DNA of 64,000 nucleotides from Podarcis pityusensis (lineage: Eukaryota): the NCBI GenBank assembly GCA_964106645.2, contig OZ067052.1; one strand, written 5' to 3'. Below the pieces are notes generated by a model. The model saw only the letters and a program-made list of their open reading frames with translations. It searched no databases and was not told where the DNA came from. The position numbers and the translations under genes were made by a program. Shown one piece after another: positions 28,608 through 61,965 of the stretch; position 1 is the stretch's first letter, and every line of letters begins with the position of its first letter.

Positions 28608-28762
28608 AGCAATTCCATGCCCAAAGCCGGAGCCAGGCTGGGGGCTGGCAGCACTTATGTAGTTACCAACACCGGAGTCTTGACTGGCTGTACCGTAGAG
28701 GTCTGCAACGGGACCCGGGCTGTTCGCCCCTGGGAATCCTCCGGGCCGGGCTGGGTTGGAGC
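28608..28762 (-). CDS. MSI2: MSI2 coding exon [52 protein letters not shown] (155 nt, phase 1-0)
   Basis: Acceptor cccggcag|GC TCC AAC and donor ATT GCT|gtaagt. Near-identical to the MSI2 C-terminal region (ORF 28548..28814). Confidence 0.97.
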
Positions 28763-28816
28763 CTGCCGGGGAAGCGGGTGCGCCAAAATTCGGTTGAGCA
28801 CTGTAGCTATTCAAGA
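28763..28816 (-). CDS. MSI2: MSI2 alternative 3' splice-site extension (54 nt, 18 aa [18 protein letters not shown])
   Basis: Acceptor ctctgcacaccag|TCTTGAATAGCTAC. The peptide matches the 18-aa insert of the long mammalian Msi2 isoform; in frame. Confidence 0.88.
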
Positions 28817-31800
28817 CTGGTGTGCAGAGAATAAAGCTGGGTATGAGGCCAGAAGCCGAGCATGCACAGTTATTACAAAGCCAAACACTAAAAAAAGAAA
28901 AGAAAACAGCCTAGGTCCAACTTCTAACACTTAACCAAGGCCATGCGATAGGAGAGCAAGTACTCAATAATAGTCAGCCCATACTACTAAGAAGCTTGGA
29001 GCTCCAAATATATAGAAATATGTATAAAGAGAGAAGGAAAAAAAAAAACCATTCAACACACTACTGCAACCAGAGACGGTAGGTGCTCAGTTTCACCAAA
29101 TTATCACAAAAAAATATATTTTTCAACATCTGATTTGATGCTCATGCAGTAGTAAAACGGGTTTTCTAGATCTGGGCACGTCGAGACAGCATTCACATCC
29201 CATGCAAACTACAAAGGAACTAGTTTTAGACTACACATTGTGTTAATATTGATATTAAATGTTGATAAGCAAAGAAAGAAAACCGTTTTTTGGATCCACT
29301 GAAAACTTTCAGATGAAATATATGTCCTGTCCACCCACCCACTTTTTAGCTCTCAAGGTACATGAAGATTGGGAGGTTTGAAATGCTTTTCTTTAAAACA
29401 AACAAACAAACAAACAAACAAACAAACAAACAAACAAACAAATGATATGCAATGGAACATTTGGGGTGTTTTAGGTACCAGAGGAGGGTTGGTTTCCCTT
29501 TCCTCCTCCCCTAATAATAAGTGTCTGTCTCCATCTCCAAAACTATTATTTGGGCACTACCGGAATGCACAAAGAAATGAGTAGCTAGAAGCAGAAACAA
29601 TCCTATAATATTAATTATTTCCAGAGAGGGAAGTAGGGAGGAAAAAAATGTAAATAGTAATAGGGAAGTCAGCTCCTTTAGCTGAAAGCATGATGCATCT
29701 CTTTTTGTCAACTATTTGGTAGAAAAAGTGAAATTAGCAGATTTAGTGGAGGAGGAAGACCGAACCATAAGCAGTATGTTACAAAGAGAGAAAACTGCCA
29801 GCTTTATGCTTTGAGACCATCCACCTGCCTTCATGACTATATCAAGGCAAGCAGTGCTATTTCTTGAGCTGATCATTCTTGACCTTTTAAAATCTATTGC
29901 TTAATTATACTGAACAAGATGCTCTCAAATAGCTCCGACTATAATGCAAACCTAGAAAATGATGTCCCAGGAACGCTGTTATTAAATAAACCTTTGCTGT
30001 TATTGGTCTATTTGCATTGTCTAGGGATGTTTGATATGTAAAATAATTGGTGGAAGTATCTGAAAAATGCTTTTAAAGAAAAAAAGAGAAAGAAACAGGA
30101 TTAAATAGCAAAAAGACACAGGGCCTGCCCTCTCTGACAACAAACTACAGAGCACCGTTCCCTCTATACATCTAGGAAGAGTGAAATGGGAGGTTGCAAA
30201 GCCTTTACCATAGCTTTGAATCTTTCAGCCCACCAAAGATGCAAGCTTGTAAGTTTCCCCAGAGGTCAAAATGCCATGTTGCCTGGAGGTATAGTTGGGA
30301 ATCCTGCCTCCTCTTTCCCAAGCTGGGAGAAAAAAACTATTTGGGAGTAATATGCCCCTGGGCATTTCACATTAGTTTTCTTTCTGCATCTTGCTAGATT
30401 CCACACTTTTGAGGAAAACAGCTGTTTGTCTATTTACAGAAAACTCCACAACATTTCCTGGAAAAGAGGGGCTTTCCCCAAAGCCTCACACACCAAAAGG
30501 GAATCTTTCTACCTCTAACGAACACCCATACTTAAAAAAGAGATAAATTGAAAAACAAATCTGGTACATCTTGAGCAACAAAGATCTGCAAAGTCCTAAA
30601 ATAAAGGCCAGCTGTAAATGTGCAGCCCCTCCCATAGCAAAGTATTGTAAGTATTAACCTGGCGGAGATAAAATGGGGTCTGTGTGCATGGAGAGAATGA
30701 ATGAAGCAGTATCCCTCGTGTTTGGCAGAGGGACAGGTGACCACAATCAGCACTGAGGCTGGGGAGAAAGATCTAGGAAAGTAACTGCATTGTGCTGGAC
30801 TGAAATGGCAAAACAACGTACTTAAAAAAATATTAAAGATTAAATGTCAAGCTAACATTTGGCGTTCTCACTCATGGAGAAAAACATCCAGCTGAGATAT
30901 TCAGAGGCCCTTTATTAACTTGCTAGAGCAGACTTTTCTTTTCCAGTTCAGTAAAGTGGATACAGGCCTTGCTGACAGCTCACCAGAAAGCCTCCGTTAC
31001 CCAGGCAAATAAATGCTTAGGCTTCTGAAGTTAGTGATGCAGAGCCTCCACATGGAAGTGGCTTTAAATCACGTCAGATGGAGCTAGTGGGAGCTAGAGG
31101 TGGCTGTCCTGATAAGGTGAGGAGTCCTGGCAGGATGGGTGCATCCAAGGGAAGTTCAAAATGGCCACCATGCAGACATGGGCAGGCCTTGGTAACAGGA
31201 CGCCCTGTGCGAGGCCAGTGGACGCCTTCCCTGCAGCCTTCGCAGTGCCGACTTATACTGGGCTTGGGGAAGGAGGTAAGAGGGCTCCGGCAGGGTCCCA
31301 GGGCGCTCCTAGGACCCTGCCAGAGCCCTCCTCCCTCCTTTCTGAAGCCAGCCAAGCGCTTGCCTGGCTTTGAGAAGGTGCCCTCCTTGGCTTGCATGCC
31401 TTGTGTGGCTGCAATGCTCACACTGCACTAAAACCGCCTCTGATATAGAGGCCATTGCTGGGGAGCTGCCCAGATAGCAAAGGGGTCTCCTTATTTCAAT
31501 GTGCTTACAAAGAAGCACAGGGACCTTGAAGGGATATAATATTTTTTAGTTGTCTCAGGATTGTGCACCAAAGGAGCTGCTGTGTGTTTGGGAAGAGGCA
31601 ACTGATGGAAGAGATGGTCCTGCCTTGTGCAAGATGGCTCCCTGACCTCTTCTAACTGTGTTCCTGGTTGCCCATGGTTATTTCCACTGCTCCCTTTTGT
31701 GTGTGTTTCCTGCTGGCTCAGGATTCATGGCTAGATACCAAAATGAGTGCAGTTCTGAAAAACGGATGCAAAGCTAAAATACAGACAACATTCTCAATAG

Positions 31801-41155: not shown

Positions 41156-41332
41156 CTGGGCTTTTAAATTGATCCGGGCTGGGAAGGTGGTGAAGGGGGG
41201 AGTTACTCGCTGAAGCAGGGTGCTCGCTACGAAGCATCTGAGCCACCCGAGGCCCCATGGAACCATAGTCCGCGTACGATAATTGAGCCCGTTGGTCACC
41301 GGGCGGAGAATAGAAACCGTAATCGGGGATCC
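41156..41332 (-). CDS. MSI2: MSI2 cassette exon, 177 nt, phase 1-1: (G)IPDYGFYSPPGDQRAQLSYADYGSMGPRVAQMLRSEHPASASNSPLHHLPSPDQFKSP(G)
   Basis: Acceptor gtatctccag|GG ATC CCC and donor AGC CCA G|gtttgt. It is 59 codons with no stop in the MSI2 frame, CpG-rich within an AT-rich intron, and has a Musashi-like G/Y/S/P composition. Confidence 0.82.
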
Positions 41333-47600: not shown

Positions 47601-49839
47601 CATACATCTATTGCTGCATAATGTGGTCAGAAAGGGTGATGGTGTTACCAGTTGCATTTGTAGCTCAAGAGGAGCATCAACAAGAGGATACATGGGATGG
47701 AGGAATGGAGGAACATTGGCAAAGACTGAATCCAGAATACATACAGTGAAGCGCAGTTTGCAAATATTGCTGATAGGTTGATAATATGATTAAGAAAAGA
47801 GCTGTCTCTTGAGACTGGTTTCTATATGGAGATGGTGCATCAAAGAGTTTTGCACAGATCACATGGTGCTGAATTGTAGAAATGGCCCAAAATACTCCTG
47901 TTCCAGGTTGACAAGCCTTGTCTGTTGTGGCCTACGGAGAGGCCAGAATGAGAACTCAGGAGAGCAGGAAAGATGTGCACCTCTCAGCTTGCATCAGTAT
48001 TATCCTCAAGATGGTTTGTCATAAGATAGGAAGGATTTCCTCTTCCCCAAAGTTCTGCTAGGGACGTAGAAACTGTAATGTGGAGAGGGTGTGGGGGAAT
48101 TGCTCTTTTGCCGTGTCAGACAGATGAGGCACCGGGGCATTTAGACAACTTCTTTAAAGCCACTAAAATGGCAATAGGCTGGGGCACTTTGACGTCTAAG
48201 TTAGCCACCCGCCCAAAGCCATAAGTATATTAGAAACAACTGCATCCTTAATAGCTGTTTTAGCTGAGTTTAAACTTGCACACTGATAAAGGATTGTCGA
48301 CAAGTGATTGGGAACAGATTAACAAAATACTTGACATACAGCAAAGTATATAAAAAAAAACCCTCACAAAATAAAATCCTGCACTCGCTCATGGAGGCAA
48401 ATAAATACATTTCTCATCTTAGCTGTGATGTTTCATGAGCAATCAATATTTATAACCTAATCAAAATCTCCCATATTGTGAATTAAACACAGTGTCATTT
48501 TCAGATGGGGCCAGTGCCATCACACGCGAGGCCTTGCAAAGCTTCTCCAAGAGAAACGGCAATCAGGGCTCCAGTTCTTCTTGCAGCATTTGACAAAAGA
48601 GTTTCCACTTGAGGGGCTCATCTTTAATCATTACAAAAGCACAGAAGTTTAATCCATTTTTGATGTAAGTGCTAATAGCTCTGTGTCCTTGAAGTTCAAA
48701 GTGGTCTTCGTGCATGTCACTAATTAGCCAAGCAAGCAGCCAGTCTGCTCCCTCTCATGCTTCTAATTAGATCCTTAACAACAAACAAATGTCGACCTTT
48801 CAAATGCTGTGCTACATTTCTCTCTCTTTTTGTTACATAGTTTTGGAGGGCAGAAGATAACCATGCCTTGGAAAAGCCTGCACCATATTTTGACATCTCG
48901 TCCAGATATTATTATTATTGAGTGGGGGTGGGGGGTGGGGAGAGAGAAGACAACAATCATAGAGGCTCGGGATTCCAAGGCAACCTGTCAAAATAGTTGA
49001 CCATGCCAATCAACTGGTCAGCCATTTTGTTTCTTGGAACAGAAGGAAGAAGTCAATGTTTGACAGCAACTTCAACTACTGGTTACCTGTTCCCCTTTTG
49101 AGATATTCATTTTCACTTTTTTGTTTTTCACTTTTAGTTTTTTTGCCATTCGCCAGCATGACGATTGATGCCACTATATCATAAAGCATTTTGCTGTGTA
49201 CCTTCTTCACCTACAGCAATGGAAGCTGGTGATTTGCTGGTCATATTCTTATCACGGTGAACTTTTATTGCTAAAAATAGCTACTCACGAAGCCACAATA
49301 TATATAGCATGTGCTCCTTATCTCACACCTGCATTCGAGAGCAGTCTGGACTCCAAGGAGCTCGTCCAATGAATAAAGAGGAGAAAGGAATATTCAGAAT
49401 ATTTATCTTTTGAATGTCTTATCTGATCGTGAGTGAGTCACTGAAAACAGTGGGCAGAAAAAGAGGTTACATGATCTTTAACACAAGTTGATAAAGTCAG
49501 GAATGAGCTGGTGGTGGCATGCAGTGGAATACAGCATGGTAAAAAGTGTGAAGTGGATTTCTGGAAGAAGGTGCCAGGTGAGGCCCAAGGTGCTTCCAAT
49601 GAATATCTCCCCAATCAGTGCCTTCACTGGGTTAAAAGGCAGCAGAATAAAGCTAAGTTGATGTGCTCTAGACCTTCACATGGTTGATTACTGCTGCCAG
49701 GTATCTGTTTGCCATTACTCTCTATATAATCCCTCATCTGAAACCCAACTACCTCATCTTTCTTTGCCTGCTTTGCTTGCTGTGTTGAAGACAAATATCG
49801 GCCCTCCAAGGTAAGTGTCTATCTTGGTTTCACTAAGAG

Positions 49840-50061: not shown

Positions 50062-51061
50062 ACTAAGAGATGCTCTGGACGTTCTGTTGTTGCTCATCAT
50101 GATGAAATTTTGGAACCTGAAACACAGAGGATGTTCTTTATGCTCCAGTGCGAAGTCACAGCCACAAGGATGGCAGAGAGAGAACATAAGAGCAGAGACT
50201 GAGGAAGCTGCTGAAAGGGTGGCTGAGGGCAGGTTGCTGCCTTTTTTTATATTGGTGTGTAAAAATGCCCTTCATGGCAACAGTGCTTTCTATATTCTAT
50301 ATTTCTCAGGACTGAAATACTTCAAGGGCCACCTGTCTCCATATGAACTAACTCTGAAAACTTCATATATCTGTTGTCCAGCTCTAGCCAGCGGCCATTC
50401 CATTATAAGCAATACAACAACTCATCCTGGGTCAATATAGAATCATTTCCAAATCATTTGCCTTTTTTATCCAAAGGAATGAAATAATCTCTCTTACTTT
50501 TTCACTCTCGTTTTAGCAATGAGTCTTTTACTGCTACCTTTTTACCACTGGTGGCCAGATTTGCATTAATTGTTTACCACAGCCTGGACAGGCCTTTTAT
50601 TAATATTAATGAGTGACTGGGAAGAAAGGGACCCTTTATTTTTAGCCTACTCTAATTGTGTAGTAATTATTCATCTACAAAACAAATGAGCCGAACTCCA
50701 TTGCTATGGCAACTGAAACTCTGGCCTCCCACTGTAACACATTAATAGGCTATTGTTCCTGTTAATTTTAAATTGAGGCCTTTTGTGCAGCTACAGATAT
50801 GAAAAAGAGGCAAATTACAATAAAACCGGGACTTAACCTCACATTTAAGTCAGAATGGTCATTGTCCAGGCATGGTTTTAAGAGAAAAGTCACTTGTTGA
50901 AATGCACTGTGGTCCACTAGGGATTATTTATTAGGGGTGTTTAGATATACTGCTTTTCAGCAAAAAGTTCTAAAAAGGGTTTACATAGTAAAACAGGGCA
51001 ACAACTTGAAAACAGTATTTTTTAAAAAAGATCCTGAAGTTTCCCCAATATTTTTATGGTT

Positions 51062-51430: not shown

Positions 51431-54400
51431 AATAGGGTGCTACTCTTTGCTGTGGACAATAAATAAAACCTGAATGTGTGAAGGCACTGTTTGGACCCAG
51501 GAATTATCAATGGTCCTGGAAGAAATAAGCAGAAAGATGACAAATGATGACTCTGCATCCGAAGGGGAGATTATTTGTGGCTCTAATATATAGCTCTTGC
51601 ATTGCTGAGCTAATATGAAAAATAGCAGGAAAAAGGTGAGCTCGCACTCATATTCGCATGGGCAACATTTATGCACAGAGGATTGCGTTCTGCAAAGAAA
51701 AGGCATATTAAACTAATAACTGTGCATGCAAAACTGTTGGGATGTGCAAGGAGTCTTCCAATCTTCATCTTTTTCATTCTTATTGCATCTCTATGAGGTA
51801 AGGCATCCCTATTCTTAGCCTAAGGAAATTGAGACTGAGAGACAGCAGTTTGCCATCTCACAAACCTAGTTATTTGTATCTGACACTCTCTCAGAAAGAT
51901 TCAGGGCAGCTGTGCTGTGGTTCCCTAGTGGTTCCCAATCTATAAAGTGTGGCCTGCTAAGTTTTAACTTGCATGAGTTCAAACATTACCTTAGTTGATT
52001 CCCCAATGTCCTGAGGGATTTGAACCCAAGTCTTTTGAGGTATGGATCCAACACTTGGTCTACCCTAGCTCTCCATCACTGTGCTTCTGCCTGTATCTGA
52101 AGAAGTGCCTGAATAGCTTTTAGATTGCCAGAGTCCTCCTGGGACTATTATAATGGAAAATGGATAATGATTGCAGGAAAGAGAAAGAGAAGACCTCACT
52201 CTTCAGCTTTGTTCCATCAGGGAAAAATTGAGTTACATGAAGTGCCTGTTCCAGGGCTTGCCAAGAGTAGAGTAAAATTCATTCATGGAGCGAAAGAACC
52301 TTTTAGAGCCCCCTTTCCTCTGAACACATGATTAGTCTGTTTGGATCACAGGAGTGAAGTGAGGCACCCTGCAAGTCAGAGCGGGTTCCGTGGAAGAGTG
52401 TTTGCCCATTAAAAATAATTCCACTGATTGAGAAGACCATTAAAAGTTAGTGACTACATTCATTACAGATTAACTTATACCGTACTTAAGCCTGCTCTCC
52501 TGAGCTGGTCACTAATTGCGCTGGAGATGATTTATCAAGTGCCCTGGATTTTCTATTACAAAATAAGTGATTAAAAGCTAATACATTTTACCCACAATAG
52601 AATCAAGTAAAATTACTGCAGCCAGAGTCAGAACTTGGCCGCAGCATTCACAGAACTCCTCAGTGTGCAGGAGGGTGAGTGCTTCACTAAGAAAGAATGT
52701 TTTGCCCTTGAATGAAGAAAATTAATGGACGGGGTGCAGGTGGACATCCCAGAACAGGCTCACAGGTATCGAACTTCTATAATGGTTGGGGTTTTCCTCC
52801 AGTGAGCGCCTCCAGAAGCTGAATGGAAATCATTCTGCTTTAAGTTCTTTTCGAAAAATAATGCAGGAAAGTAATTGTCGTATAACAGCGAGGGGCAAAC
52901 CAGCATCACTTGAATTCTTTCTCTCACTCTACCTACTTAAGGGAGCCTTCAGGGGCCTAGTGATGGCACGTGTTGCAATTTATTTTTCTCTACTGACGTG
53001 TCACCCAGGCTCACAATGCCTTGCTGCAACCCTTTTAAAAAGAGGGTTGATTGGCTGATTGAGGAATGGGATCCATGGACAGTTTCCCTGCAGCGTTTAA
53101 AGAATTCTCAAACAAGCAGCAATCCTCAATGAAGTTAGCCAAAGCAAACTCCCCATGACACTTTTTCAGGTACAGAATAGAGAAAGGTGCCTTACACCAA
53201 CACATTGGCCTATCTAATTCAGGACTATATACGCTGATTGGTAGAGGTTCTCCATGGTTTCAGACTGAGGGGGAGCATCTTTTCCCAGTCCTACCTGGGA
53301 TTTAACCTGGGACCTTCTGCATCCAGAGTATGTGTTCTACTAAAGAGCCACATTGCACTTTGAGCAAGAGAGGAGCCCCAGTGACAAAGCATCAAGGTAA
53401 CAAGTGAGTTTGACAGCAGGGCGAGAACACCAGGGCAGCAAAATGTCTCACCTTTTTATCTATCAAAGCACAATTTTTCAAGTAAACAAATTCAATATGT
53501 AGCAACAGCAGGCATGCAGGCAGAAAGCCAGCAGGGGTTTGAGAGCTTTCCAGCCTACTACATAAAGAGCTACATCAGGGCCGGACTGACTGGAGTCAGA
53601 TAGTTGCCTTGAGTGGTAGAAGCCCAAGAGGCAGCACCCAAAGCAGCAGAAAAGCAGCACCGGCAGCTGGTAAGATCTCAGCAGGTAGCTCTTAGAGAGC
53701 ATGAGATCTCCTAAGATTTTGGCGAGACCTTGCCAGAAGCCAGCGCTCTGCGGGTTGCCACCATGCCACACAAGTAAGGAAGGCTTGCAGGGCAGCACAT
53801 TCCCATGATGCCTCAAGTGGAGAAATGGGATGTGCCACCTGAGTCGCATGCATGACTCTCTGCGGGACAGGTAAAGAAGAGGCTGTGTGCAGGCTGAGCT
53901 GAGGAGTCTCAATGTCTGGATCAGACCGTGGCACCAGGGGGAGGGCTTTGGGTTTCTTAGGCACCGGGGAATGTTTAGGGGCAAGCCAGGCCAGGATGAA
54001 AAGGATCGTCTCCATTTGAACCAGATAGCTGGTGCTTAAAAGTTAGCAGACCAGCTTTTAAATGTCGGGAAATTGACAGAAGCTGAGGACCGTCCAGTCT
54101 GGGGTGAACCATGCCTAAGGAACCAGGGTAATCTTTTTTTCCCTGGTGGTCCAAAAGGGAACAAGTAGAGCTAGGCAATGGAAGTGCAGGGGACGCAAAA
54201 GCCATTCAAATATGTCAAAGTGCTATGAGTTATATATGCTAGTTCAAGTGCTTGCTTTTAAAGGAGAGCATAGATACAGTGGTGGAATGAAGAAAACCAA
54301 TGGACACAGTTATCTCTGGATACAACCTACTATGGGAAGCACAAGGCAGGGAAGGGCATACTAGGTTGTAGTGTCGTTCTTTACATTGAAAGACCCTGTC

Positions 54401-54534: not shown

Positions 54535-56296
54535 ATGCATCTTCTTTTTACCACACTATAGAGTGAAAATTAGTAGGTGCATTAAGATGCATTAAGATTT
54601 TCTCTTTCTATTGCATCAGCTGTCCAGGGCTACAGTTGTAATTATTGGGTCTTTCAGAGGAGAAAGACATTCGAAAACCACTTGCTATCCCCCAGGTGGT
54701 GCTTGTTAACATTCTGACTACATGACTTGGATTAAATGTTATACACTTTTTAGACAGTAATACATATACATTTAAGCATCCAGGGCTTGCTTCAAGGTCT
54801 ATCCCTTGGACTGTGAAGAAAACACAAGTGGCTATTCAAACTGTTCCAACATTGTTGCTACAAATTTCCCCATCATCATTCTGTGTACACAAACCAACTG
54901 TTGCTCCCATCTTTTTTCTTTTTTTATTACTGCAATTTGCAAACAAGAGAGGTGCTTAATGACAAGACTAAATATTTGAAAGTACTGGAATTAAGTGTAC
55001 GACGTGGATTGCTACTTCCCATGCAATTTTCCGCTTTGCTAACTTTTAGATACGTTACCCATCTAATTTTCCTGCATCACACATTTAACAGTGGGCCCCA
55101 TTCCTTGTAGTAGATTTGCTGCTTAAGAGACAAGTTATAGAATCATACCTCAAGTGCGTAAGATTTACAACTATACTGGCACAATAAGGGAAGTGGGACA
55201 CCTTCAATCAATGAAGGGTATGTACTTGCCATCTGGGTCAACAACATGGGGGGGGGGCAGTCTGTGTGTTTTACGATTTGTTAGAACAATATTCTTAACT
55301 GCATAATGAAACAATATTTAGCGTACCTTATTTCTTCCAGTAACATATGCTGAGTTAACTGCTTGGATTTAACCGTCTACACTGAGCATGCTCAGTAAAT
55401 TGAACACACTCCAAACCAGCAGTGCATCTTCAGGCAAGATGTCGAACTGGGTGGGAGGGGAACGGTGATGTACGCAATCTACTCTCAGCAGGATATGTGC
55501 TGACAAAACAGTAGCAGCCACAAACCAAATGTAATGTGGCATTCAGGACTTGAATTACCAGCTGCCAACCCTACCCACTGCTGCTCATTTGGAAAACAAT
55601 TTTGAGAAGCTGAGTACAGAAAACTAGGTGCAAAAAAGAAAGAAAGAAAGAAATGCAGGGAGGGAGAAGAAGCAAAAGACAATTTTGCTGGTTTGATGAG
55701 GAAGATGATGAGACTTGCCTTGGGACACCTAATATTGACTGTTCATGAAATGTTCAGTAGTGCTTGAGGGGAGAAAAAAACCAAAACATTATCCTAAAAC
55801 TTGGCAATGTGGGAATGAATACAAACAGTGGCAAGTTTGTGGCGTAGCCAAATTTGCACTTTAGGATCTAAAACCAATTCCCTTGTGCCTCTGCATACTC
55901 TGACGGTTAGTCATTGTACATACTCTCCATGACTTAGGTCTCCAATGGACGGCTTTCCTGCTCTGCCGGCCTGGTTTAAGGCCTCCAAAAAGGATTCGGA
56001 GCGCTAATGCAGAATATTAAGAAGGTTAATGTTCTGTAGGAAGCCTTGAGTGTACAATGCTTGCTGAAATTAAACTTGGCCTCAAATCATAAAGCACTTA
56101 CATATGAGTAACTCCCATTGGCTTAAGTGGGAACTACTCACAAGTAAGTGTACTTAGAATTAAAAGAAGGGTCACTTTTTTTCTTTTACAACGGTCAATT
56201 GACTACCCCCCGCCAGACCACCAAGGGCCCTTGCAGAATAATAAAATGTCCTGATTGAATTTGGTAGGCCCAAGTTTGGGAGATAATGATCACTGT

Positions 56297-56464
56297 ACTA
56301 TGCATCCAGGTGTTCAGCATTGCTCTACACAGGTTGACCTACACTTCCAATCAAACCGCGGCTACACTGCAACTGCCATGCTCTTTCGAGCCGACAAGAA
56401 CCTATAATATCAACTCAACAATGCATGTTCTACAACTACGTCTACTGCTACCGGTTACAACTAC
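56297..56464 (-). promoter_or_regulatory. Cluster of 10 RUAG Musashi-binding-type motifs in the MSI2 intron
   Basis: Plus-strand CTA at 56298, 56325, 56339, 56362, 56402, 56430, 56436, 56442, 56448 and 56461. All read GUAG or AUAG on the transcript; three are full (G/A)UAGU elements. Confidence 0.6.
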
Positions 56465-56562
56465 GACAAGTGCATGCATTTAGTTCAGTCCCACAGATAC
56501 ATAACACTCTAAGAACAGGCAAGGGGAGATGTGAGATGTTTCACGAACAACAAGTGTTTTGT

Positions 56563-56568
56563 TTTATT
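56563..56568 (-). terminator. Intronic polyadenylation signal AATAAA for the candidate alternative last exon
   Basis: Minus strand cttacttAATAAAacaaaacacttgttgttcgtg, preceded by ~140 nt of U-rich UTR-like sequence. Confidence 0.55.
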
Positions 56569-56706
56569 AAGTAAGGGAAAGTAATTTTTAAAAAAACCAA
56601 AAGAGAGAAAGTGTACTAAAATAAACAAAAATAAATATATATTTTTTAAAAGAGAGAGAAAGAGAGAGAGAGAGACATTTTTCAAGAGTTGGATATGAGT
56701 CGTTTC

Positions 56707-56720
56707 TTAAACCGTTTCAT
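56707..56720 (-). CDS. MSI2: Candidate MSI2 alternative last exon, coding part (D)ETV-stop
   Basis: Acceptor ttttttttgcttgttcag|AT GAA ACG GTT TAA. A phase-1 join gives GAT GAA ACG GTT TAA. AATAAA lies at 56568-56563 with a GU-rich element downstream. Confidence 0.55.
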
Positions 56721-59700
56721 CTGAACAAGCAAAAAAAACATGCAACCAGCTGCTACTAACAAGAAGCTGGACACAGAGAGAGGATTAATAGGTGTGGACA
56801 AACCTTCCTGCTGAGCGTGCTCAGAAGAGTGTTTGAGAGGAGTGCACGTCCCAGTGTAAGAGAGGCCGGAAAGAATGCCTCAGAGACACCCTCTCTCACA
56901 GCAGCCCCAACCAAGCAAGAGAGAAAACAACAAGAACATAACTGCTCACACTCACCATCAAGGTCAGTAGCTCATGTTATGAGATTGGTTATAGCTGGCA
57001 AGTATAAAGGACAGTAAGGAACTGGTGAACTCAGGATTTCAGAAGTAGGAGCAGGACTTTGGCCAAGGTGCAGGGGAGCAAGAAGGAACTCTGGGGGATC
57101 TTTCTGTTTGGGAGTTTTACCACTTCGTTCTTAGTGCAGTCACTCACAAGTGGTCAAGCAAGTAGACTTTGGTGCCTCCCCACGGCCAGGCAACAGAATC
57201 ACTGGCCATCTCATTTTCCAGCCACGAGGGAAGAAACTAAAGCCACAGAACTATCTGGCTAATGCATTTTACTTTCCAAATTTTATATTCCTTTAAAAAA
57301 CAAAGCAAAACCCCGAATTAACCCCGCTTCCCAACTTCACCTTTGTGAAACAAAGAAGCAAACAGCATTTTCAGGAAAGGGTGGAATCGGCTCAGTGTAC
57401 TATTAACGGGGTAGAAGAACGGACATGGTGGTCTTCCACCATCTATCCAAATAAAGCGTGTGAGGGGTGCTCCATGCAGGGGCCTGTATGCATGATGGCC
57501 CAATGCAGGAGGAATTGCATGAATCAGGGCACTGGATACACAGAGCTCCCCCATGGGGGAGGAGAAGGGCACCCACCCACTTCATGGACTGCTGACGATG
57601 CTTGGTTGAGTGTCTGAACTGGGCGGCGGCGGGGGGGGGGGAGGGCACACTAAACACTGGTGCTTTAAATATGCCAGAGGAAAAAATCACCTCAAACCAT
57701 CAATACCTTTCCAGTAAACTCTGCCCCAATGGCTCCCTTCCCTACAAGTGGATTTTGCCAACAGGCAAAGAGGTTTGTGCATCAAGCTGCCACCTCCATC
57801 AAACTGAATGGGGAAGCCTGCCCACGAAATCCATACATGCTCGGAATTGTAACAGAAAAGTGCTATTGATAGTGAAACTTGTGCATTGGAAGAGTTTGTT
57901 ACAAGATGCAGACCATCATGCCAATGTGACCCAGGTCCTGATTCATCAATAACATAATAAGCGGAAAGTGAAACGTTGTCAAGGTGGGTGTAAAGGCTTG
58001 GCTTATATGGAGGGTTGCGATGTCCTCAACAATTGCGTGGTTTTAATAACGGTCGGGCTAACGTTTTGGCACATGGGCACTGCCCATGATGGTTACCAGG
58101 CAGAGCCTCTTTGGTGATAGTCCCACAGCTGCAGAACTCCCTCCCAAAGGAGATAAGATAGGCCCCTTCTACAATGCCATTTAGGTAGGTGGCGGTCAAT
58201 ACATTCTTTTTCCTGCCAAACTTTTAGTTCGTGTTGGGAGGCTGGTTTCATTTGCTTTATCTTGGCTTCTCTCAATGCTCTCCAGTTGTAATTACAGAAG
58301 TGTTTTCACTGTTGTAACCTGCCTTGGGGGACCTTTCAGGGCTGAAAGAAGGTATATAAATGTTTCTATAAATATGAACGAAGAAACATACAGCCCCAGC
58401 TCCCAGGCTAATATCGCCCTGTGATCCTCAGATGAAAGGTAGTATAGCAATTTAGTAAATAAAAAATAAAAATAAAACAAATGTTTCCCCACCAGAATTA
58501 AAAGCATAGGCCCTTGATCCAGGGAGGGGTCATCTGCCTGTGGATTGTAATTAGTAGAGTACCCGTACGGGATGCACAAGAGGCCAGAGTGGGGAGTGAG
58601 GACAGAATTCTCTGCATCCAACAGCCAGCCTTATGAAGTGTGGTTTAAAGATCCATGAACACACAAATTCTTATGTTATGAACCACCCTGAGACCTGAGA
58701 GTATAGGGTGGTATACTATTTTAATAAATAATAATAATTGTGTGTACGGCAGTGCTGCAATCACAGGGCCCAACTACCAACTTCTGCAGGGGTGCAGACC
58801 TTCCCCCCCCCAAAAAAAATCTGTTCAGCAGTGAGAGATCAATAAATATACACTGAACTGATGTCTTGTGGTTTAGACATTTAACATTCGTACATCTTAA
58901 GACACAGGTGTGTCTTCGCTTTAGTAGTCACTTAAGTCATCTTGCAAGTGTGCCCCAAGTGATATTGCTCTAATCATCAAAATATTGAAGCCAATTACTT
59001 CCATTTGTCATTCCCCCTCTGTAATGAATCAGGCCTGAGTGCCATTAACATGAAGCTGACTCCATTGCTCTTAAATACACTTCACTATCAATGCTATTCC
59101 CTTTGATGGAAATGGCTGCAAATGGAATGCTGTCCCTGAGCTGAAGAGGCTTCTTTGTCAATGGAAACCACTTCTGCACATCAACAGACAGTTTCCTTGA
59201 GGGAGCATTAGGGTAGATCTGCAAGTGCAGAGTTTTTCCCCCCCAAAACACACAAGAAATATATACAGGGCACCATACTGCTCTTTAAACTTGCCATATA
59301 TGTTGGTGTTAATTTCAGGGTTAGAATTTTCTTTTTTTTCTTTTTTGGTATCACAAAGTTAATCTGTTCTTTAAAAAAGAAAAAAAAAATCCAAAAAAAT
59401 TAAACAAAAAAACAAAAAAAACAACCAAATGATATCAAGCAGAGAAATTGGCTGACACTCAGTTCAGCTGTGATGGGACACTCTGATTAAAACAGGACAA
59501 CAGTGAAGATCAGACTTAATCTGGCAGAACCCTTGTCCTTTTTGTGGGAAAATTGATCATCTCTATTTAAAATTAAACTGGAACCAAATGGGCCCAAAGT
59601 GTAGGTAAGGGACGAGGGAATCTGTCCATTCTTCCTCAAATAATAAATGGAATCCTTTTCAGAAAAGGATTTTGAAAAAGGAAAAAAAAAATCCCTTTGC

Positions 59701-61848
59701 TATCTTTGAGCAAACCAACCCTTGGACTTTCCCTACATACAACGATAAAATGCTACGGATGAATCCTTTGTAGCCCCGCAAGCAGTGCCAGTTTGCATGG
59801 AACGGAGTTCTCCAAACATCCCACTTTGGACCCTAAATAATTCAGTCTCCCCCCCACCCCCGCCAAAGTCTATTGCGGTGTGTGTGTTGCTGCTTGACAG
59901 CACGTTCCCCACCTCTGGGACCTTTTGTTTTGTGTCAGTTTGAAGAGGCCTATAGCTAATGAGTGTAGGAATTTCCATGTCAAAGAACAAGCTTCATCAT
60001 GAGAGAGCTGAATAAAACAGTTACCTCCAAGTTGTTTGCTACATGTCTCAACGTGTACAATCTGGCTGGGGAATTTGGGCCCAATCGTGTTGTCTCCAAT
60101 TGCCCCCCCCACCACCCCCGGTGCAATAACCCAGTTAATATTAGCAAGAACAAACGGCCGGATAAACGCACAAGACAGTACACAGAGATGAGCAAGCAAG
60201 ATAGATTGGGGAGCAATAAAACCCACTGAAAGCAGCAGTCTACCCTTTGTCCTTGCTTTGTATTTAGGGTTCAGAATGGCTTCAGGCACAACCAAGGTAT
60301 CAGCCAACAAGCAAATACAGCAAAAGAGAGGCACTGGTAAGTCTTAGCAGCCCACTCATGATTTCACTCAATTATGCCAAAGGGATAATTCACTTTCCCC
60401 TAAATTGGAATGCTAGGATATAATAGCGGCTTAACTACTTCCCCTAGCAGGAGGGGCACTGGAGAACAGAGTGGATGGAAGTGGAGCTTTTTATAGGTGG
60501 GCAAACATTTCTCATGAAACTGGAGCCAGAGTTTGCAGCAGGTAACAAAAGATGGAACAATATTCACGCTCAAAGAGCAAAAGGTAGTTTTAAAGGTGTC
60601 TGCAAAAGGTTATACCCTTCAGAGAGCCATTCCAATGTACGCCAAGGTGGAACACCCGTGATTTAGGTTGAACTCCTAAAACTGCAACTGACTTCAAACT
60701 ATGGTGCAATTTAGACATCATGCCATGTCGCCGTTTGTGCTAACCCTAGTTTAGAACCAAAACCTTGGTATGAGCTTCCAAACATACTAGCAGACCACAG
60801 TTTAGAACAGCTTGTCTGCTGTTATATTCTGCTACTCAGCTTCCATCAAATCACTCTCATCTCCCTTTTGGTACAGCTTCTGGAGGTCAAACAATGGCTA
60901 TCAATATCACACCAAACCAGAGTTAGCACAAAATCCAGTTTGTAAATCAACTTCCCTCATTGTATCAGATTCTGGTTTGTTGGCCAATTGCAAACTATGG
61001 TTTTGTCAATTCAAACATCACACCAGAACCATGCTTAAGCACCCCAACCATATTTTAGTGAGATGTCTGAACTAAGAAGTAACTGGGGAGAACTATTTTT
61101 CTAGCATCCAGGTCCAGCTGACCAGACTTGTCAGCTAAAAATGGCACGAGAGAAGGCAAGCTGCACTGCTCACCCTATTCTGTATAATAGTAGACCTGTT
61201 CGCATTGGCCAGATCTGGAGTGCCACCATTTCAAAGGGCAGGGACACACACTATAGTTCCCTTTTCTCACGAGACAGATGAATAAACAGAACTTACTAAA
61301 TAGCTGAATGCTAAGCTGATTTGTAGGAGGTTGATCATGGTACCCTCCATAGATCAAAGTTTGATAGAGCATTCCTAAACACCATAATTTGGAATCCTTG
61401 CTGATATTAATGAATATGTGGTTTCTTGCTTTGGATTGGGCCACCACTGAGAGTAACTTGCTCACTGCATTCATCCCAAACATTAAAGTTGGAGATGCAG
61501 GTTGCTGCCCTAACAAGTTGAGGAATTAACAGGTGTGTGTGTATATGCGGGTGTGAGTGTGGTTGCATTGTTAGCCCAGTGCAAACTGTGGAGAAATGAA
61601 AACTTTTGTTGTCCTTGACATTTTCATAAAAGGTCCAGTTGACAGCTCCCAGTAGGGTGGACTTTGTATTGGGTGGATCCGCAAAGACCATCTGGTCTTA
61701 CAGCCTATGCTCTGCTCTGAGTTATGGGCTCTGCTTGTAGTATTTGGTTTTCTTTGGTGGGTATCCCCGCACCCCCAGATCACTGTGAGAAAAGTCAGAG
61801 AAAGGGATGGACAGCTGCAGCCACATAGAATACCGACAGAGCTTTTAC

Positions 61849-61905
61849 CTGGCCCTGCATTCTGAAGGTATGCCATGTAGCCGCCTCTTCCACGGCCCCC
61901 CCTAC
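61849..61905 (-). CDS. MSI2: MSI2 alternative 5' splice-site extension (57 nt, 19 aa: GRGGRGRGGYMAYLQNAGP)
   Basis: The frame stays open past the first donor to a second donor CCAG|gtaaaa (GT at 61848-61847). Length is a multiple of 3. The peptide appears in ORF 61571..61927. Confidence 0.78.
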
Positions 61906-61965
61906 CTGATCCTCTTGCTGCTGCCACTGCCGCTGCTACTGGTCCGTAGGCTGCTGCCGGAAAAC
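61906..61965 (-). CDS. MSI2: Musashi-2 internal coding exon (Ala-rich, phase 1-1): (G)[19 protein letters not shown](G)
   Basis: Minus strand reads ...tttttccccacggccag|GTTTTCCGGCAGCAGCCTACGGACCAGTAGCAGCGGCAGTGGCAGCAGCAAGAGGATCAG|gtaggg. The peptide matches the known MSI2 segment [21 protein letters not shown]; AG/GT sites are canonical; 60 nt. Confidence 0.96.

What the first reader, a model, noticed from the sequence alone, without database searches (positions are those of the whole stretch)
56290..56760. Candidate Musashi-autoregulated alternative last exon that ends MSI2 in a PDZ ligand (-DETV)
Seen on the sense (minus) strand, ~5.1 kb downstream of the Ala-rich exon, in this order: GUUAGUAG (Musashi element, 56760-56753); UGCAUG (RBFOX, 56744-56739); U8 tract plus CAG acceptor; a 14-nt coding stub; ~140 nt of U-rich UTR; AAUAAA (56568-56563); GU-rich element; then 10 RUAG motifs in 168 nt. 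Both upstream donors are phase 1, so splicing gives ...ARGS-DETV* or ...QNAGP-DETV*. Established: E-T-V-COOH fits the class I PDZ-binding consensus (S/T-X-V). Musashi RRMs recognise (G/A)U1-3AGU with a UAG core, and Musashi binding downstream of exons promotes their inclusion in photoreceptors. Inference: high Musashi levels would switch MSI2 to a short isoform. That isoform keeps both RRMs, loses the C-terminal phospho-regulated region and the 5.4-kb 3'UTR, and gains a scaffold-docking tail. This would be a feedback loop that could tether an RNA-binding protein to PDZ scaffolds at synapses or cell junctions.
Basis: partly seen in the sequence, partly recalled or inferred. Interest (0 to 1): 0.9.

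Follow-up and report, generated by a model that had tools for sequence, protein, structure and literature searches.

The report
Ancient truncating exon in Musashi-2

Summary
All motifs are at the stated coordinates, and the 10-RUAG cluster is the densest in the window. DETV has Glu, not Ser/Thr, at position -2, so it is not a class I PDZ ligand. The stop codon and AAUAAA are absent in cotton rat, and the acceptor is absent in bowfin, teleost and shark. None of 349 non-human MSI2 protein models ends in DETV.

Its donor is identical in all five species compared, and 42 annotated isoforms (alligator, birds, mammals, sharks) use it. In amniotes every acceptor choice gives a stop or frameshift, removing the phospho-regulated exon. 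GUUAGU, UGCAUG and the UAG cluster lie downstream of its donor, where Musashi and RBFOX promote inclusion. A second acceptor at 56508 matches an Anolis isoform.

Best reading: a Musashi/RBFOX-controlled poison or truncating exon (feedback, about 55%). The scan noted the UAG cluster before on this same DNA, not elsewhere.

The parts
61906..61965 (-). Ala-rich MSI2 exon (60 nt), proximal donor, phase 1
   Evidence: peptide identical to Podarcis muralis X23
61849..61905 (-). 57-nt in-frame extension to a second donor (RGG-rich), phase 1
   Evidence: present in models from shark to turtle
56804..56892 (-). Conserved cassette exon, 89 nt, frameshifting; tandem acceptors also at 56894 (91 nt, stop inside) and 56890 (87 nt, stop inside)
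   Evidence: tblastn 100% over 17 aa to Alligator sinensis X7; 91% rat, 85% shark; all three acceptors annotated in birds (P0603, P0594, P0595)
56798..56803 (-). Cassette donor (GAAG|GTTTGT), identical in lizard, cotton rat, bowfin, teleost and shark
56753..56760 (-). Proximal Musashi-type element, +43 from the cassette donor; a UAG core is present in all five species
56739..56744 (-). Proximal RBFOX element UGCAUG, +59; present in rat, bowfin and shark, one change in the teleost
56707..56720 (-).
56563..56568 (-). AAUAAA in a poorly conserved U-rich stretch; not present at this place in the other four loci
56509..56559 (-). Conserved branch-like and pyrimidine block ending in the AG of a distal acceptor
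   Evidence: 84% rat, 74% bowfin, 68% teleost
56480..56508 (-). Distal exon start; phase 1 gives ECYVSVGLN*, identical to the C-terminus of Anolis carolinensis isoform X27
   Evidence: P0260; bowfin same frame, rat shifted by one base, AG lost in the teleost
56473..56478 (-). Distal RBFOX element UGCAUG, +325; a UGCAUG at a comparable place in all five species
56301..56468 (-). RUAG cluster (10 in 168 nt), Musashi-type; upper half conserved
   Evidence: rat 7 and teleost 9 in 170 nt are their locus maxima, bowfin 5, shark only 2
41156..41332 (-). Downstream 177-nt optional exon (PDYGF...), open in the shifted frame
28608..28816 (-). Exon with both regulatory Ser-Pro sites (S278/S303 equivalents); second acceptor at 28762; read out of frame after the cassette
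   Evidence: PMC5599597
26007..26048 (-). Coding part of the canonical last exon (GPLIATAFTNGYH*)

Best explanation
The stretch is the downstream control region of an ancient optional exon of MSI2 (56892-56804). Shown: the exon and its donor are conserved from shark to rodent and used in many annotated isoforms. Shown by translation: in amniotes each of its acceptors gives a stop inside the exon or shifts the frame, so the phospho-regulated exon is never read correctly. With the long acceptor of the next exon the stop lies 203 nt above the last junction, a decay (NMD) substrate by the 50-55 nt rule. With the short acceptor it lies 47 nt above, and a truncated protein may survive. Inferred: Musashi on the UAG elements (+43 and +340 to +500) and RBFOX on the two UGCAUG elements (+59, +325) promote inclusion. 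High Musashi would then lower activatable full-length MSI2, a negative auto- or cross-regulatory loop.
For: Exon and donor conservation. 42 of 349 non-human models use the exon, none ends in DETV. All three tandem acceptors are annotated in birds and all truncate, which fits selection on truncation rather than on a peptide. UAG cluster far above chance and the locus maximum in rat and teleost too. Musashi activates exons from the downstream intron (PMC9509328), as does RBFOX (PMC4991804). Mouse Msi2 is already a Musashi splicing target at another exon: a 24-nt exon falls from about 0.85 to 0.38 inclusion in the double knockout (PMC9509328 supplement).
Against: No reads could be laid, so use in this species is unshown, and no squamate model with the cassette was in my sample. 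The mouse retina lists of Musashi-dependent exons show only two Msi2 rows (the 24-nt exon and a 5' exon), not this one; the full table is truncated and NMD could hide it. In shark the exon is in frame (93 nt) and the UAG cluster is weak. The commonest annotated product probably escapes NMD. A version that skips the phospho-exon stays in frame (Alligator X7). The published Musashi map stresses proximal sites, and the big cluster is 340-500 nt away. The models are automated predictions.
Confidence: 0.55

Rival explanations
1. The main product is a truncating terminal exon, but not the reader's: either the distal acceptor at 56508 (ARGS-ECYVSVGLN*) or read-through from the cassette. The UGCAUG and UAG cluster would then sit in its 3'UTR, where Musashi would control its processing or translation.
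For: Anolis X27 ends in exactly this peptide, and bowfin keeps the frame. The block before the AG looks like a branch point plus pyrimidine tract and is conserved. A Mus caroli model reads through the cassette donor. No consensus donor was found close below 56508.
Against: Only 1 model of 349 for each form. The AG is lost in the teleost although the block stays; the rat frame differs. No conserved poly(A) signal nearby: the next AAUAAA is about 1.6 kb lower in the window and at unrelated distances elsewhere.
Confidence: 0.2
2. The cassette is real but controlled mainly by RBFOX or other neuronal factors; the UAG motifs are not a Musashi feedback sensor.
For: Both UGCAUG sites are more widely conserved than the UAG cluster, including in shark. 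The exon is absent from the Musashi-dependent lists that could be read.
Against: The UAG density is extreme, is higher than any on the other strand, and recurs in rat, bowfin and teleost.
Confidence: 0.17
3. One reading: splicing to 56720 and polyadenylation near 56545 give a Musashi-induced short MSI2 whose DETV tail docks on PDZ scaffolds.
For: The AG, pyrimidine tract (75%), stop and AAUAAA exist in this genome. The AG and following bases are shared with rodent. Contigs of possibly-RNA runs hold the stretch. DETV fits the loose class III pattern.
Against: Not class I. Stop and AAUAAA absent in rat; AG absent in three fish loci; no branch-like motif found; 0 of 349 models. The holders are not on record as RNA and would also hold intronic RNA or DNA.
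Confidence: 0.05

Closest known systems
Poison exons of RNA-binding protein genes (SR proteins, hnRNP L, PTBP1, RBFOX; general knowledge, not looked up here)
   Same: Deeply conserved optional exon with conserved flanks in an RNA-binding protein gene; premature stop or frameshift; the protein's own motif next to it.
   Different: Here one common outcome may escape NMD and give a truncated protein; the exon is in frame in sharks; feedback is untested.
Musashi-activated photoreceptor exons (PMC4991804, PMC9509328), including the 24-nt mouse Msi2 exon
   Same: UAG motifs in the intron downstream of an optional exon; same gene for the 24-nt exon.
   Different: The 24-nt exon is in frame and lies upstream of the Ala-rich exon. 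This one truncates, also carries RBFOX sites (RBFOX is absent from photoreceptors), and is not in the Musashi-dependent lists I could read.
Human MSI2 variant 2 (exon 11b, ...QDIIFIN; PMC5599597)
   Same: Alternative splicing that keeps both RRMs and drops the two regulatory phospho-sites, leaving a protein that cannot activate translation.
   Different: Exon 11b lies upstream of the Ala-rich exon and is a true last exon; the element here lies downstream of it.
Class I PDZ-binding motif (S/T-X-hydrophobic-COOH; PMC2891790)
   Same: Terminal Val.
   Different: Position -2 is Glu; the motif is not met.

Membership tests
Class I PDZ ligand | Ser or Thr at position -2 | tested here: not met
   Glu at -2
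Class I PDZ ligand | Free C-terminus conserved in orthologues | tested here: not met
   Rat reads on for 50 residues; Mus caroli model has DETV internally
Class III PDZ ligand | D/E-X-hydrophobic at the C-terminus | tested here: met
   E-T-V fits, but the pattern is loose and the isoform is unsupported
Alternative last exon at 56720 | Acceptor, stop and poly(A) signal conserved, or annotated use | tested here: not met
Alternative last exon at 56720 | Junction reads and 3' ends | not testable with these tools
Autoregulatory poison exon | Optional exon with real splice sites | tested here: met
   Conserved donor; 42 annotated isoforms in other species; not shown for this species
Autoregulatory poison exon | Premature stop more than 50-55 nt above the last junction | tested here: inconclusive
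   203-285 nt for most joins; 47 nt for the join to 28762; none when the phospho-exon is skipped
Autoregulatory poison exon | Deep conservation of exon and flanks | tested here: met
   60-91% across rat, bowfin and shark for exon and proximal flanks
Autoregulatory poison exon | Host protein's motif at a position that promotes inclusion | tested here: met
   UAG elements downstream of the donor
Autoregulatory poison exon | Inclusion follows Musashi dose and rises on NMD block | tested here: inconclusive
   Not in the significant mouse retina lists; full table and CLIP files truncated; NMD not testable

The most novel reading that the evidence does not exclude
A 600-nt vertebrate-wide switch in which Musashi and RBFOX choose among several routes (cassette, distal acceptor, read-through) to MSI2 forms that bind RNA but cannot be switched to activators. 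The exon would have changed from an in-frame coding exon (sharks) to a truncating one, and the donor may pair with the distal block to bring the far UAG cluster close.
Probability: 0.2. Interest if true: 0.65.

Novelty: new member of a known kind. Interest (0 to 1): 0.4.

Why it matters
MSI2 dose matters in stem cells, leukaemia and photoreceptors, and the exon removed here carries its repressor-to-activator phospho-switch. I found no paper describing a Musashi poison-exon or truncation feedback at this exon (9 searches of an open-access library), although automated annotation shows the exon in many species. If it holds, it gives a precise, testable element for how Musashi limits or re-tunes itself.

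Tried and rejected
Human- and great-ape-labelled proteins that appeared in cluster lists (P0377, P0578, P0579, P0587) and unlabelled assembly proteins were left out of the counts; no human contig was fetched. Rfam gave only chance-level hits. Local RNA folds were not unusual (z from -1.5 to +1.3). A donor-to-distal-block pairing ranks in the top 1-3% of local background in lizard, rat and bowfin but not the teleost; it was picked by eye and is kept only as a lead. No bird, reptile, amphibian or marsupial locus could be fetched, so I cannot say how widely the TAA and AAUAAA occur among lizards. Paper searches for an MSI2 last exon, poison exon or unproductive splicing found nothing specific.

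Full report
Setting. The window holds the 3' part of MSI2 on the minus strand: the Ala-rich exon (61965-61906, extension to 61849), a 177-nt optional exon (41332-41156), the exon with both phospho-sites (28816 or 28762 to 28608), the canonical last exon (26048) and a further last exon (20392). The Ala-rich exon and its extension match Podarcis muralis isoform X23 exactly, including a shorter Ala run, so the genome is most likely a lacertid lizard. The window has no N.

Observation. The RUAG cluster is real: 10 in 168 nt against about 1 expected, and the next best window on either strand has 5-6. One stated fact is wrong. A class I PDZ ligand needs Ser or Thr at position -2 (PMC2891790). DETV has Thr at -1 and Glu at -2, which fits only the loose class III pattern.

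The proposed exon is not conserved. Orthologous DNA came from cotton rat (L003), a shark (L002, GCA_003427335.1), bowfin (L004) and a teleost (L005, GCA_029706075.1). The rat keeps the AG and the first codons, but TAA is CAA, the frame runs for 50 residues, and AAUAAA is absent. The three fish loci lack the acceptor. The U-rich stretch with the AAUAAA is only 25% identical to rat, and an AAUAAA is expected in 14% of 200-nt stretches of this intron. Of 349 non-human MSI2-type protein models with the Ala-rich exon, none ends in DETV; the one that contains it (Mus caroli) reads through from an upstream exon. This is a sample of clusters, not a full census, and the exact joined sequence was not looked up.

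What is there instead. Its donor GAAG|GTTTGT is identical in all five species. The exon is 91% identical to rat and 85% to shark, and the flanking intron is 60-87% identical across all four. Forty-two models from alligator, birds, mammals and sharks use it, and all but one (the Mus caroli read-through) either stop inside it or splice on to later exons. The acceptor has three tandem AGs. In the window they give 91 nt (stop inside), 89 nt (frameshift) and 87 nt (stop after GCL). Bird models exist for all three, with the predicted peptides. Mammalian models use an internal AG (50 nt in rat, also frameshifting). In sharks the exon is 93 nt and in frame.

Consequences. After the 89-nt form, the long acceptor of the phospho-exon gives an immediate stop, 203 nt above the last junction; this matches the annotated ...SGKS* ends. 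The short acceptor gives a new 34-residue tail with the stop 47 nt above the last junction, borderline for NMD; this matches the bird ...WGTT* ends. Skipping the phospho-exon keeps an open frame. In all amniote cases the two Ser-Pro sites needed to turn MSI2 into an activator (PMC5599597) are lost.

The motifs. A proximal UAG is present in all five species. The distal cluster is the densest of its locus in rat and teleost, present in bowfin, and weak in shark. Musashi bound downstream of an exon promotes it (PMC9509328), as does RBFOX (PMC4991804). Mouse Msi2 is a Musashi target at a different, 24-nt exon, so self-regulation of splicing has precedent. This cassette is not among the significant exons I could read, a real though limited point against.

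A second acceptor. The conserved distal block ends in an AG at 56509. Splicing there gives ECYVSVGLN*, the exact C-terminus of Anolis carolinensis isoform X27; bowfin keeps the frame, rat does not, and the teleost has lost the AG. It rests on one model.

RNA evidence. Runs of this organism hold the stretch, but none of the holders is on record as RNA. Use of any of these exons in this species is therefore not shown. Annotated isoforms are automated models; that they usually rest on RNA-seq is my own knowledge, not a result here.

Verdict. Observation mostly right, PDZ claim wrong, named exon unsupported. The underlying feature is a conserved truncating or poison cassette of MSI2 with Musashi- and RBFOX-type downstream enhancers: a new member of a known kind, apparently not described, with feedback inferred at about 55%. 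Interest 0.4.

Noticed in passing
window 59763-59809: A 45-nt intronic element 89% identical in cotton rat and 98% in bowfin; no obvious exon.
   Followed up: partly
window 52504-52572, 50559-50690, 48616-48849: Three more conserved non-coding elements in the same intron (rat; shark and bowfin; shark, bowfin and teleost), with no reading frame matching MSI2 models.
   Followed up: partly
window 28935-29248: Conserved block (bowfin, shark) above the phospho-exon acceptors, with 2 UGCAUG and 8 UAG in 340 nt; could control choice or skipping of that exon.
   Followed up: partly
window 61849-61905: The RGG-rich extension is used in models from sharks to turtles and in Podarcis; birds and mammals have altered versions.
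   Followed up: partly
window 41156-41332, 26048, 20392: The 177-nt exon and the two last exons are open in two frames, and annotated isoforms use both.
   Followed up: partly
mouse Msi2 chr11:88368211-88368235 (PMC9509328 supplement): A 24-nt exon upstream of the Ala-rich exon is Musashi-dependent (inclusion about 0.85 to 0.38); no matching peptide was found in the window.
   Followed up: partly
L002 13865-13957: The shark cassette is in frame (93 nt); the amniote copies differ by small indels and all truncate.
   Followed up: yes
window 56807-56788 with 56502-56481: The cassette donor can pair with the distal conserved block (-13 kcal/mol, top 1% of local background; similar in rat and bowfin, not the teleost).
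   Followed up: partly
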